A stretch of DNA of 63,980 nucleotides, filler included, from Olpidium bornovanus S191 (Eukaryota; Fungi; Olpidiomycota): assembly GCA_017911155.1 (NCBI GenBank). It is 24 parts of 24 records of this genome, joined end to end, with 100 filler letters (N's around TTAATTAATTAA, not from the genome) between each part and the next. Parts side by side here need not be neighbours in the genome. Positions count along the whole stretch, not along the records: positions 7,862 to 10,576 come from JAEFCI010008494.1; 23 more parts are not named here. One strand, 5' to 3'. Both the position numbers and the translations under genes were made by a program. This document shows positions 7,762 through 10,676 of the stretch, piece by piece. How positions within the stretch are numbered: the first letter of the stretch is position 1; the number at the start of each line of letters is the position of its first letter. A model generated the notes under the pieces. That model worked only from the letters and a program-made list of their open reading frames with translations, made no database searches and was not told where the DNA came from.

Positions 7762-9629
7762 NNNNNNNNNNNNNNNNNNNNNNNNNNNNNNNNNNNNNNN
7801 NNNNNTTAATTAATTAANNNNNNNNNNNNNNNNNNNNNNNNNNNNNNNNNNNNNNNNNNNNACGGTGCAAATGAAGCGCGCAACCCAGGGCCACATTTTT
7901 AATGCAGCTCCCGCGCCGGGGTTGTTTTTTTACTTCCGGCCGGGAAGGGTCCCAAGCCCCTGTAAATGCAGAGGGAAAATGCTAGGCAGATAGACAGAGC
8001 GGATCTAGTTTATGCGCATAAAGAGACCCCGGCGGGCGCGGGCGTGTTTCCAGTGGTTTTTTTTTCTTCTTGGCGCTGCGGGTTGGTAGCCGTTCGTCGC
8101 AGCGGGGGCGTTCGTTGTCACAGGGTCGTGAGGAGGGCCGGGTGACATTTGAGGGATTTTGGCGGAGACGAGGTGGAGGACAATCGGGGTGGAGCGCCGC
8201 CGCGGAGGGGGCGGGTGGGGTGGTTGCGCCTTGTTTTTGGTTTATTTTTATTTTTATTTTTTTTTTTTTTGCGCGCTCGGCCTCAGTTTTGTTGTGAAGT
8301 CGGCCTCTCCGGCCTGAATTATGCCGCGACAGTTTTTGGTTCGGCGGCGTTTTGTGTCGAGGCGGAGCGACGAAGACGCGGCGGCCAACATTTTGCAGCG
8401 AATCTCGAAAAGTCCGCCTTTCGCGGAAAGGGGAGGAGGATGGGAGGATGGGAGGGGAATCCTCGCAAAATTGCCCGCCAATCCTTTCTGAATTGACACG
8501 GCAAAGCTTGTCGCGCCGCAACGTTCGCCCGCTTCGAAAGGGCGTGATCGGACCGGCGGGCCGCCGCCCAAAGGTTTGACCTTCAATCTGGCGGAAAAAA
8601 ACGTCCACGGGGTGGCAGCGTCCCCGCAGGGGCGACCGCCGACCGGCCGTCGTTAGCTCAGAGATTGCTGCAGAGCGTTTTCTTTTTTTTTGACCGCGGG
8701 CGAGATAGCTTTTTGCGATTTGTGTTTCCGGCGCGGCCGGAAAAAGCATAGAAAATCGGCGGTGTTTTTCTTCATTGTTTTTGTTTTTTTTCGGCTTTCG
8801 GGCGCAGCGCCGGCGGTTTGACCCCCCCCCCCCCCCCCCAACCGGGGTTTGCCTTCGAGTTTGTGCTGCCCCGCGGCCGAACCTGTCGCGTCCGCCCGCC
8901 GTCCGGGCGCCGAAACAGCGAAAACGCCGCGCCCGTCTTCGCCCGCTTTTCCCGAGGGCTCTTGCCGTTTTCGACGGCAAACTTGCAAAACGCCTTTTTT
9001 TTTCCCCCGGCCGCAAGCAACTCGCCGGTCGGAGTAGTCGTTCGTTCGATCGGGACATTCTGATAAGATGCTGCCGCAGTTGCGAGCGGGGTAGGGGGCG
9101 CGGATAAACTGAGTCGAGACACGGCGCCGGGGTGCGTCGAAATCATGTCGGCTCGAAGCAATCGGCAAATTTCAGTGATCCTACGAACGCAGGCGACGGT
9201 GCCAGCGATGCGGGGGGAGGCGGAAAATGACGGCCCGCCGGCAGCGCTTTTGCTGCCTCCGCAGACCGCCCGCATGGCCGGTAATCACAGTCGCATTCAC
9301 CGACCACGACGGCTGAGTTGAAACACGAAGGCACACCGGGGAGACGGGCCAATCAAAGAGCCACTTTTTTCTCTGCAAACAGAACGCCGCCTCCCACAGA
9401 CGTAAATCGCTCTATATAGAAGCAAGGAATTGCGTGTAGAATAAAGGGCAAGTTGCACCGACCGATCAAAAAAAGCAGTCGGCCCGAGACGTTACTCGCG
9501 GCCGGCTCTCAAAATCGCCCGGCTCTCCGACGGGCTACAAAACTCTACAAATACCGCGAATAATATCGGGGCGTCTAAAAAAAAAAAAAAAAAAACAAAA
9601 AAACCAGGTGCGCGGCAGGTTGCAACGAA

Positions 9630-10406
9630 TCAGGAATCGTCGGACCTCGGGCGTTTTTGGGGTAGCCCCTCGACCTCGGCGAGCGGCTTAGTTTCGAGTT
9701 TGCCTACGGCGTCTTCGGCGGCGGCCGCCTCGGCTTCCGCCTTGGTCGGCTTCCCGCGGCTGCTGCCGAGGACCCTTCCGAGGTAGCTGACGTCGCAGTC
9801 GTAAAGCTTGCCACGCGGGGTGGCGCCCTCGGCGGTCCTGACGTCGTACACGGGGCTGCTGTTGTCCCGGGAGGCCTTCTGCACGGTTTCCTGCAGCCGG
9901 CTCTTGGGGTGCTGCGCCCGCTTGCCGGACGGGCCGGTCCCGTCCGGGTAGTTCGCGGGGTTGACCTCCCCGAGCAGCCGGAGAAGGTAAGCCCGCACGG
10001 CGGCGACGCTGCGGCGCACGTCGACGTAGTACGCGCCGACGAAGGCCTTGAAGGCCTCGGCCTCGAGGCGGAGCGCGTCGTCGGGGCCCAGCCCGGGCTC
10101 CGCGCCGGCCGCCGCCGCCGCCGCCGGCGGAGCGGGCGGCCGGACCCTGAGCAGCTCGTTCAGCTTCACGTGCCGGCACAGCGCCTGCAGGTACCTGGAG
10201 CCGCAGAGGGTGCGCTTGAGCTGGCCCAGCTCGCCGTCCCGGGCGAGCGGGTGGCTGTCGAAGACGTGCTCCGCCGCGACCAGGCCGTAGACGGCGTCTC
10301 CCAACACAGCCAGGCGGTCGTTGGTGGGGGCGGCGCCGCACATTTTGGACGTGAGGGCCTCCTCCAGCAGGCTGCCGTTTTTGAAGATCGGCAGCGGCAG
10401 AGCCAT
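9630..10406 (-). CDS. Bacterial-type RNase III domain + dsRBD protein with degenerate catalytic residues (258 aa from the first ATG, intronless)
   Basis: LLEEALT...NDRLAVLGDAVYGL (compare NERLEFLGD), GELGQL, AEAFKAFVGAYYVD (compare ADxFEAxxGAxYLD), then a dsRBD: HPKSRLQETVQK...PVYDV...YDCDVSYLG...GKPTKAEAEAAAAEDAV. Confidence 0.85.
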   Translation of the reverse strand: MALPLPIFKNGSLLEEALTSKMCGAAPTNDRLAVLGDAVYGLVAAEHVFDSHPLARDGELGQLKRTLCGSRYLQALCRHVKLNELLRVRPPAPPAAAAAAGAEPGLGPDDALRLEAEAFKAFVGAYYVDVRRSVAAVRAYLLRLLGEVNPANYPDGTGPSGKRAQHPKSRLQETVQKASRDNSSPVYDVRTAEGATPRGKLYDCDVSYLGRVLGSSRGKPTKAEAEAAAAEDAVGKLETKPLAEVEGLPQKRPRSDDS

Positions 10407-10676
10407 CGGCGCTGGCCCGGGGGCGGTGGGGGGTGGGGGGGAAGGGCGCAAGCGGTTGCGGTGCTCCGGGCGAGAGAGAGAGCGGGACGGCGGCGGAACA
10501 GGGGAGCGGGGGAGTGCGTGCGTGCGTGCGGTGCGCGGATTTTCCGTCGGCGTTCTCCCCCCTCCCCCCGTTCTCCNNNNNNNNNNNNNNNNNNNNNNNN
10601 NNNNNNNNNNNNNNNNNNNNTTAATTAATTAANNNNNNNNNNNNNNNNNNNNNNNNNNNNNNNNNNNNNNNNNNNN

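What the first reader, a model, noticed from the sequence alone, without database searches (positions are those of the whole stretch)
9630..10406. Minimal bacterial-type RNase III with a naturally substituted catalytic centre
Seen: a 258-aa intronless RNase III + dsRBD protein. The signature is NDRLAVLGD (catalytic Glu->Ala) and the second motif is EAFKA (DxxE -> ExxK); ALTH becomes ALTS; the C-terminus PQKRPR is NLS-like; there is no obvious mitochondrial presequence. Known: E. coli RNase III E117K binds dsRNA without cleaving; the degenerate RNase III proteins mL44 and mL57 are mitoribosomal; Mucorales R3B2 is an atypical RNase III acting in a Dicer-independent silencing pathway. Inference: this may be a dsRNA-binding pseudo-nuclease (RNAi regulator, Dicer partner or antiviral sensor), or an R3B2-like enzyme outside Mucorales.
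Basis: partly seen in the sequence, partly recalled or inferred. Interest (0 to 1): 0.75.

Follow-up and report, generated by a model that had tools for sequence, protein, structure and literature searches.

The report
Catalytically dead bacterial-type RNase III orphan
This is a real single-exon gene for a small bacterial-style RNase III with a double-stranded-RNA-binding domain. Two indispensable metal-binding glutamates are naturally replaced, so it most likely binds double-stranded RNA without cutting it, and no close relative was found in any public protein collection searched.

Summary
On the minus strand, 9630-10406 is a 258-aa ORF with an RNase III domain and a dsRBD (Pfam 8e-13 and 1e-6; AlphaFold pLDDT 89; best solved folds are E. 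coli and Aquifex RNase III).

A33 replaces E. coli E41 and K120 replaces E117. All 79 nearest homologues have Glu at both sites. In E. coli neither position tolerates any change, and E117K binds dsRNA without cleaving it.

The protein has no orthologue. An exhaustive HMMER scan found nothing above 40% identity, and the top hits that could be named or placed on a contig are canonical bacterial enzymes. Nothing closer turned up in JGI metagenomes, IMG/VR or GTDB genomes. It sits on the longest branch of the tree, 2.3 times the median.

The frame is still open after that much divergence (about 2% chance under neutral drift), GC3 is 0.91 and the fold-determining residues are kept. So it has been maintained by selection.

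Best reading (about 0.5): a dsRNA-binding pseudo-nuclease, possibly nuclear and possibly a nickase partner. It is not mL44/mL57-like, not R3B2-like and not close to giant-virus RNase III. The organism, the expression level and the partner are unknown. Read support is firm for K120 only.

The parts
9630..10406 (-). Complete 258-aa ORF: RNase III domain, dsRBD and a basic tail, stop codon included
   Evidence: GC3 is 0.91, GC1 0.73 and GC2 0.51. AlphaFold2 pLDDT 89.3.
9966..10385 (-). RNase III (endonuclease-fold) domain, residues about 8-147
   Evidence: Pfam PF00636 and PF14622. The model has helices 11-147. Foldseek's best matches are E. coli and Aquifex RNase III at about 1e-12.
10347..10358 (-). 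ALTS, residues 17-20, where the family has ALTH. His is present in 78 of 79 homologues.
10296..10322 (-). Signature motif NDRLAVLGD, residues 29-37. D30 = Ec E38, A33 = Ec E41 (codon GCT at 10308-10310), V34 replaces the usual Phe, and D37 = Ec D45 is kept.
10110..10142 (-). An 11-residue Pro/Ala insertion (RPPAPPAAAAA, residues 89-99) absent from all 79 homologues. Just after it, the conserved GGR is GPD (R to D109).
   Evidence: pLDDT dips to 76-81 here.
10044..10058 (-). Second catalytic motif EAFKA, residues 117-121. E117 = Ec D114. K120 = Ec E117 (codon AAG at 10047-10049).
   Evidence: The X1 contig covering 9838-10118 is identical.
9693..9908 (-). dsRNA-binding domain, residues 167-238, with an alpha-beta-beta-beta-alpha layout. 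K168, L171, Q172, E173, Y187, G194, K222, A225, E226, A229 and A230 are kept.
   Evidence: Pfam dsrm 1.3e-6
9645..9662 (-). C-terminal PQKRPR, residues 249-254. KRPR fits the K-[KR]-x-[KR] monopartite nuclear-localisation pattern.
   Evidence: The sequence is. The link to the NLS pattern is my own knowledge and was not tested.
10407..10576 (-). 5' flank up to the edge of the piece. It is C/T-rich, contains no ATG, and has an in-frame stop at 10452-10454.
9577..9603 (-). A T7-G-T19 tract on the gene's strand, starting 26 nt after the stop codon. This is 3'-flank sequence. No AATAAA or TGTAA lies between the stop codon and 8258.

Best explanation
This is a maintained, lineage-specific pseudo-RNase III. 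It is a bacterial-type (class 1) RNase III domain with one dsRBD, in a eukaryote-like genomic setting. It still folds and most likely dimerises through the RNase III domain, and it most likely binds double-stranded RNA. It cannot carry out two-metal cleavage because the Glu that bridges both Mg2+ ions is Lys (K120) and a second metal ligand is Ala (A33). As a homodimer it would hold or shield dsRNA, as the E. coli E117K and Aquifex E110K mutants do. Paired with an active RNase III subunit it would leave one working site and nick one strand. The KRPR tail suggests a nuclear location. Shown here: the domains, the fold, the substitutions, the absence of orthologues, the long branch and the maintained frame. 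Inferred: RNA binding, loss of cleavage, dimerisation, localisation and the cellular role.
For: Domains and fold. Substitutions: A33 and K120 stand against Glu in 79 of 79 nearest homologues and are shared by only one other protein among 178 domain instances. Effect of the substitutions: deep mutational scanning of E. coli rnc found that no mutation is tolerated at E41, D45 or E117, and E117K binds but does not cleave (PMC10037077). E117/E110 coordinates both metals (PMC3867540). E110K Aquifex enzyme has been crystallised bound to dsRNA (1rc7 and 1yyo). Evidence of selection: the frame is open after divergence to 40% identity or less from every relative, whereas substitution-only neutral drift keeps it open in 1.7% of simulations. 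GC3 is 0.91, and 37 of 55 columns that are at least 80% conserved are retained, including the structural G36, D37, G124, A125 and D129 and the dsRBD residues. Possible transcription: run X1 holds two identical contigs that lie only inside the ORF (9685-10118) and none over the 1.7 kb flank. Precedents for non-catalytic RNase III proteins and for nicking heterodimers: RNC1, KREPB4/5 and engineered E. coli heterodimers (PMC3867540).
Against: No biochemistry was done. No orthologue exists to show that A33 and K120 are conserved rather than recent. Only 4 of the 14 listed differences to the soil relatives fall on third codon positions. A second, more diverged soil variant shows 1-, 8- and 19-nt gaps inside the ORF, which could mean relaxed constraint or decay in relatives. 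The run kind of X1 is only guessed to be RNA. The usual interface Phe is Val (V34) and the conserved GGR arginine is Asp (D109), so dimerisation and RNA contacts through the catalytic domain may also be weakened. The organism and any partner enzyme are unknown.
Confidence: 0.5

Rival explanations
1. It is a decaying relic: a bacterial-type rnc gene, perhaps acquired horizontally, that lost its function and is drifting. It is still open only because stop codons are rare in 73%-GC sequence.
For: It has the longest end branch in the tree, 1.51-1.58 against a median of 0.64-0.68. Catalytic, RNA-contact (GGR to GPD) and interface (F to V) residues are all changed. It scores 79 bits against a 166-bit cut-off. 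There is no orthologue anywhere. The listed differences to soil relatives are not concentrated on third codon positions, and one variant has gaps that are not multiples of three. Other frames of the same GC-rich stretch are also open for 217-239 codons.
Against: Neutral drift to the observed divergence keeps the frame open in only 1.7% of simulations, even without indels. The codon-position GC pattern is sharp, at 0.73, 0.51 and 0.91. The ATG and the stop delimit the two domains neatly. The hydrophobic core and dsRBD residues are retained and pLDDT is 89. The 96%-identical soil variant has no gaps over 586 nt of the ORF. Identical contigs that look transcript-like are present in X1.
Confidence: 0.2
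2. It is a divergent mitoribosomal RNase III-like protein (mL44 or mL57 type), with its targeting peptide on an upstream exon beyond the edge of the piece.
For: mL44 also combines a degenerate RNase III-like domain with a dsRBD. Mitoribosome chains (3j7y_c, 6zm5_c, 9hch_c, 6ywe_5, 5mrc_5) appear in Foldseek at 1e-8 to 1e-7. The piece ends 170 nt upstream of the ATG, and a pyrimidine tract followed by CAG lies just before the ATG.
Against: No mL44-specific Pfam family was listed at E<=1 for this protein, although PF22935 RM44_endonuclase exists in the data and is on record as a weak hit for P0078. No mitoribosomal chain appears in phmmer against the PDB at E<=1. Bacterial enzymes match better (24-25% identity, 1e-12) than mL44 chains (16-19%). 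The N-terminus has net negative charge and runs straight into the conserved domain. KRPR at the C-terminus points to the nucleus.
Confidence: 0.08
3. It is still a nuclease with an altered mechanism or substrate, for example R3B2-like single-strand cleavage. It would use the remaining acids D30, D37, D57, E115 and E117.
For: R3B2 shows that an RNase III domain with a non-acidic first ligand (N52) and a swapped Asp/Glu can cut ssRNA (PMC8136814). This protein also has D114 changed to Glu. D114 itself is mutation-tolerant in E. coli.
Against: R3B2 keeps three acidic ligands, including the bridging position. Here the bridging position is Lys, which abolishes activity in E. coli and Aquifex. The protein has only one dsRBD and no specific sequence similarity to fungal proteins.
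Confidence: 0.08
4. It is a giant-virus (Nucleocytoviricota) RNase III gene, either viral or endogenised in a protist genome.
For: The two nearest viral clusters in the language-model feature search are Nucleocytoviricota RNase III clusters, at 0.94 and 0.93. The gene has no introns.
Against: IMG/VR RNase III loci, giant-virus MAGs included, are only 19-30% identical, which is less than bacterial enzymes at 35-40%. Peptide-pattern scans of IMG/VR found no close relative. The nearest predicted structures are all bacterial.
Confidence: 0.05

Closest known systems
Bacterial RNase III (Rnc; E. coli, Aquifex aeolicus), especially the E. coli E117K (rnc70) and Aquifex E110K mutants
   Same: The architecture and size are the same: about 150 aa of RNase III domain, a short linker and one dsRBD. 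It gives the best sequence and structure matches. Lys sits at the bridging Glu, as in the laboratory mutants that bind dsRNA without cleaving it.
   Different: Here the substitutions are natural and come together with E41A, H-to-S in ALTH, F-to-V in the signature motif, GGR-to-GPD, an 11-residue Pro/Ala insert, a missing N-terminal helix and a basic KRPR tail. The gene lies in a eukaryote-like, gene-poor context. It scores far below the equivalog cut-off (79 against 166 bits).
Plant chloroplast RNC1
   Same: It is an RNase III-family protein whose catalytic residues are naturally mutated and which acts by binding RNA (PMC3867540).
   Different: RNC1 has two tandem RNase III domains and is targeted to the chloroplast. 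This protein has one domain, a dsRBD and no presequence.
Kinetoplastid editosome partners KREPB4/5 (and KREPB6-10)
   Same: They have degenerate RNase III domains that are thought to pair with an active RNase III subunit so that only one strand is cut (PMC3867540; PMC6800513, abstract).
   Different: [quoted passage not shown] My recollection is that they also have a zinc finger, are larger and are mitochondrial. No zinc-finger or PUF family was detected here.
Mucorales R3B2
   Same: It is an atypical eukaryotic RNase III with a non-acidic residue at the first ligand position and Glu in place of Asp at the D107/D114 position.
   Different: R3B2 keeps three acids, including the bridging position, has two dsRBDs, is an active ssRNA nuclease and forms a Mucorales-specific clade. 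This protein has Lys at the bridging position and one dsRBD.
Mitoribosomal mL44
   Same: It combines a degenerate RNase III-like domain with a dsRBD. There are structural matches at 1e-8.
   Different: Its similarity is weaker than that of bacterial enzymes. No mL44 Pfam families matched and the ORF has no targeting sequence.
Uncharacterised bacterial tandem protein P0078 (435 aa, metagenomic)
   Same: Its second domain carries the same pair of substitutions, E41 to Ala and E117 to Lys (NERLAFAGD ... GALKALIGA), followed by a dsRBD.
   Different: It has two RNase III domains in one chain and sits on a gene-dense, bacterial-looking contig. It is only 31% identical to this protein. The free tree does not join the two. 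A forced clade is not rejected (p-AU 0.95), so common descent versus convergence remains open.

Membership tests
RNase III superfamily (class 1, bacterial type) | RNase III all-helical domain followed by one dsRBD | tested here: met
   Pfam PF00636, PF14622 and PF00035. AlphaFold model with pLDDT 89. Foldseek match to 7r97 and 2ez6 at about 1e-12.
RNase III superfamily (class 1, bacterial type) | Signature motif ERLEFLGD with Glu41 and Asp45 | tested here: not met
   The motif is DRLAVLGD. Glu41 is Ala33 and Asp45 is kept as D37.
RNase III superfamily (class 1, bacterial type) | Second acidic pair D114/E117, where E117 bridges both Mg2+ ions | tested here: not met
   The pair is E117/K120. Glu is present in 79 of 79 homologues at the K120 column.
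RNase III superfamily (class 1, bacterial type) | Equivalog score for TIGR02191 of at least 166 bits | tested here: not met
   79.4 bits
RNase III superfamily (class 1, bacterial type) | Mg2+-dependent cleavage of dsRNA | not testable with these tools
   This needs an enzyme assay.
Mitoribosomal mL44/mL57 | Match to mL44-specific families or to mitoribosomal chains by sequence | tested here: not met
   Nothing of the kind at E<=1 in Pfam. No mitoribosomal chain at E<=1 in the PDB phmmer search.
Mitoribosomal mL44/mL57 | N-terminal mitochondrial targeting sequence | tested here: inconclusive
   The ORF has none and there is no upstream ATG within 170 nt, but the piece ends there.
Mucorales R3B2 | RNase III-like domain followed by two dsRBDs | tested here: not met
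   Only one dsrm match, and only 20 residues follow it.
Mucorales R3B2 | Three retained acidic ligands (E56/E113/D116) with Asn at the first position | tested here: not met
   The corresponding residues here are A33/D37/E117/K120. The R3B2 residues are from PMC8136814.
Kinetoplastid KREPB pseudo-RNase III | Zinc finger plus degenerate RNase III domain plus PUF-like domain | tested here: not met
   No such Pfam families were found. The architecture is taken from PMC3867540.
Plant RNC1 | Tandem RNase III domains in one polypeptide | tested here: not met
   There is a single domain.
Nucleocytoviricota RNase III | Closer to viral than to cellular RNase III | tested here: not met
   19-30% identity to IMG/VR loci, against 35-40% to bacterial proteins.

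The most novel reading that the evidence does not exclude
An unsampled soil eukaryote lineage maintains a nuclear protein that is a natural counterpart of the laboratory rnc70 (E117K) mutant. It would be a bacterial-type RNase III turned into a dedicated dsRNA clamp. It would either shield dsRNA from Dicer or other RNase III enzymes, or pair with an active RNase III to make a strand-specific nickase. The same Ala/Lys solution would have arisen independently in a bacterial tandem protein (P0078).
Probability: 0.25. Interest if true: 0.65.

Novelty: new variant of a known kind. Interest (0 to 1): 0.45.

Why it matters
Non-catalytic RNase III proteins are known from only a few settings: RNC1, the editosome partners and the mitoribosome. 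Each of these showed a new way of handling structured RNA. A free-standing minimal Rnc-plus-dsRBD protein that carries the textbook inactivating E-to-K change in nature would be a ready-made test of what a binding-only RNase III does in a cell. It would also test whether nicking heterodimers occur outside kinetoplastids. The same Ala/Lys pair in an unrelated-looking bacterial tandem protein hints that this is a preferred route to inactivation. The limits are plain: one gene on a 2.7-kb piece, organism unknown, no orthologues and no functional data.

Tried and rejected
- **Word-index protein search.** It returned one distant bacterial hit. The candidate list was probably swamped by Ala-rich words.
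- **Exact-protein look-up of the ORF.** The protein is not on record.
- **Close-relative scans.** JGI metagenomes, IMG/VR and GTDB genomes gave nothing close.
- **Degenerate DNA pattern for DRLAVLGDAV in metagenomes.** It matched 48 stretches, but none encodes an RNase III relative by tblastn. They are chance matches.
- **Phage collection tblastn.** No match.
- **Donor lineage from trees.** I looked for a donor with a quick tree and a careful tree. No supported placement came out. The top hits that carry a name are scattered over Opitutales, Verrucomicrobiota, Myxococcales, Elusimicrobiota, Cyanobacteria, Dehalococcoidia and Pseudomonadales.
- **Common origin with P0078 domain 2.** It is not joined in the free trees and not rejected by the AU test, so this is unresolved.
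- **Giant-virus origin.** Rejected on identity.
- **Identifying the organism.** Run names are coded. There is no TGTAA or AATAAA near the 3' end and the codon usage is not diagnostic. I considered a kinetoplastid, an amoeba and a green alga and could not decide.
- **Other ORFs in 7862-9600.** No Pfam match. I treat them as chance frames in GC-rich non-coding DNA.

Full report
**What is there**

The piece 7862-10576 contains one convincing gene. It is a minus-strand ORF at 9630-10406 encoding 258 aa. Pfam finds an RNase III domain at residues 30-129 (E 7.9e-13; PF14622 5e-9) and a dsRBD at 167-235 (1.3e-6). The bacterial equivalog model TIGR02191 aligns over residues 8-236 but scores only 79 bits against a 166-bit cut-off. 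phmmer against the PDB puts E. coli, M. tuberculosis and Aquifex RNase III first, over the full length.

An AlphaFold2 model built from an 80-sequence alignment has mean pLDDT 89.3. It shows the all-helical nuclease domain and an alpha-beta-beta-beta-alpha dsRBD. Foldseek ranks the matches as follows:
- E. coli and Aquifex RNase III at about 1e-12, with 24-25% identity
- yeast Rnt1 at about 1e-9
- Drosha at about 1e-8
- mitoribosome chains at 1e-8 to 1e-7, with 16-19% identity

The nearest predicted structures in the ESM Atlas are all bacterial RNase III, with TM up to 0.70/0.83.

The coding sequence is 72-76% GC while the flanks are 57-62% GC. GC at codon positions 1, 2 and 3 is 0.73, 0.51 and 0.91. 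The remaining 1.7 kb holds no ORF with a Pfam match and no tRNA. It carries homopolymer runs of 18-19 nt. This looks like a eukaryotic gene-poor context rather than a bacterial one. That judgement is an inference, and the organism is unknown.

**The substituted centre**

Aligned to E. coli numbering, the key residues are D30=E38, A33=E41, D37=D45, D57=E65, E117=D114 and K120=E117. Against the 79 nearest homologues, Glu is invariant (79 of 79) at both the A33 and the K120 columns. Other departures from positions that are at least 80% conserved are:
- His to Ser in ALTH (His in 78 of 79)
- Ser22 to Met
- Phe to Val in the signature motif (Phe in 71 of 79)
- GGR to GPD
- an 11-residue Pro/Ala insertion that no homologue has

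Most structural positions are kept, among them L32, L35, G36, D37, G58, L60, A121, G124, A125 and D129. The dsRBD positions K168, L171, Q172, E173, Y187, G194, K222, A225, E226, A229 and A230 are also kept.

Among 178 RNase III domain instances taken from all retrieved proteins, only this protein and the metagenomic tandem protein P0078 deviate at E41, D45 or E117.

A33 is encoded by GCT, two substitutions away from either Glu codon. K120 is AAG.

**What the literature says about those residues**

- A deep mutational scan of E. coli rnc found no tolerated mutation at E41, D45 or E117, whereas D114 is tolerant. E117K gave 3% cleavage in a gel assay. It is described there as unable to cleave but able to bind dsRNA (PMC10037077).
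- E117 (E110 in Aquifex) coordinates both catalytic metal ions (PMC3867540).
- Aquifex E110K has been crystallised in complex with dsRNA (1rc7 and 1yyo, listed).

On this basis the canonical two-metal site should be dead in this protein. That is an inference from homology, not a measurement.

**Relatives**

The exhaustive HMMER scan of 1.84 billion cluster representatives gave 2518 hits. None scored better than 84 bits or 40% identity. Nearly all of the top 150 carry the canonical xERLEFLGD motif. The hits that have names or contig context are bacterial, from scattered phyla.

No closer relative turned up elsewhere:
- not among exact proteins on record
- not in JGI metagenomes
- not in IMG/VR
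- not in GTDB genomes

A profile scan of IMG/VR retrieved viral RNase III genes, including giant-virus MAGs, at only 19-30% identity. The giant-virus lead from the language-model search is therefore not borne out.

In maximum-likelihood trees the protein has the longest terminal branch, 1.51-1.58 against a median of 0.64-0.68, and no supported sister.

**Is it maintained?**

I mutated the coding sequence at random, with the ORF's own base composition and no indels, until the protein was 40% identical to the start. The frame stayed open in 1.7% of 300 runs. Together with the sharp codon-position GC pattern and the retained core, this argues that the gene has been under selection for most of its divergence.

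There are reasons for caution:
- Other frames of this GC-rich stretch are also open for more than 200 codons.
- Of the 14 differences to soil relatives that the read tool listed inside the ORF, only 4 are at third codon positions (my count).
- The soil run appears to hold two variants. One is about 96% identical with no gaps over 586 nt. The other is about 90% identical with gaps of 1, 8 and 19 nt. If those gaps are real they break the frame.

**Reads**

Two runs hold parts of the piece, and two further runs of X1's study were laid with them. X1 (organism A, run kind only guessed as RNA) has two contigs identical to 9685-9858 and 9838-10118. They confirm the K120 codon and the EAFKA motif in independent data. 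They lie only within the ORF, as a low-level transcript would. The A33 codon is covered only by a contig of the 96% soil relative (10147-10412, 10 differences, one of them listed). Read support for A33 therefore remains open.

**Membership**

The protein is a homologue of class-1 RNase III but fails the catalytic signature, so it should not be called an RNase III enzyme.
- **mL44/mL57.** It did not match by sequence and it matches the mitoribosome chains less well by structure than the bacterial enzymes. An upstream targeting exon beyond the edge of the piece cannot be excluded. Within the 170 nt available there is no ATG.
- **R3B2.** That enzyme keeps three acids and has two dsRBDs (PMC8136814), so this protein differs on both counts.
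- **KREPB proteins and RNC1.** Their architectures differ (PMC3867540).

**Mechanism proposed**

The RNase III domains would dimerise to form the usual dsRNA-binding valley, and the dsRBDs would clamp the helix. With Lys in the metal site, no cleavage would occur. The outcome would be either sequestration or protection of dsRNA, or single-strand nicking if the partner subunit is an active RNase III. Engineered E. coli heterodimers nick dsRNA, and the same has been proposed for KREN/KREPB pairs (PMC3867540). The C-terminal KRPR fits the monopartite nuclear-localisation pattern (my own knowledge), which suggests a nuclear site of action. I put this reading at about 0.5. The rivals are a decaying relic at 0.2, and a mitoribosomal protein, an altered-mechanism nuclease and a viral gene, each below 0.1.

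**Verdict**

The R3B2 and mL44 alternatives are not supported. This is a new variant of a known kind, the non-catalytic RNase III proteins. It is of moderate interest, limited by the lack of organism, orthologues and functional data.

Noticed in passing
window 7896-7979 (+): A type-P1 twister ribozyme (RF03160), 59.8 bits (gathering score 67.2), E about 2e-13, matching the full model 1-68. The conserved core is intact (UAA..GC.GC...GGUCCCAAGCCC..GUAAA.GC.GAGGGAA) and P1 carries a 27-nt insert. Several contigs in runs X1, X3 and X4 match its 3' half (7938-7981) with 1-2 mismatches, so organism A may carry and express further copies.
   Followed up: partly
P0078 (L049 and L050, 6001-7308 +): A metagenomic, bacterial-looking 435-aa protein with two tandem RNase III domains and one dsRBD, both domains degenerate. 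Domain 1 reads NERLAFLGD...GAVEA. Domain 2 reads NERLAFAGD...GALKA. Domain 2 therefore has the same Glu41-to-Ala and Glu117-to-Lys pair as the window protein. It looks like a bacterial intramolecular pseudo-dimer of RNase III domains, and I do not know of any description of it.
   Followed up: partly
window 9077-9480 and 9624-10412 (run X2, soil metagenome): The soil run holds relatives of both the gene and its 3' flank at about 90-96% identity, apparently as two variants. In one contig, 202 other letters stand in place of 215 nt of the flank (9409-9623). The more diverged variant has gaps of 1, 8 and 19 nt inside the ORF.
   Followed up: partly
window 8238-8270, 8822-8839, 9577-9603: There are long homopolymer or near-homopolymer tracts: T-rich with TTTTTA repeats, C18, and A19-C-A7. 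T-tracts recur on the + strand between 7924 and 9015. This strand-asymmetric low-complexity non-coding DNA has no ORF with a family match.
   Followed up: no
window 7982-9058 (-): A 358-aa open frame that is very basic and low in complexity, with no Pfam match. I take it for a chance frame in GC-rich non-coding sequence.
   Followed up: partly
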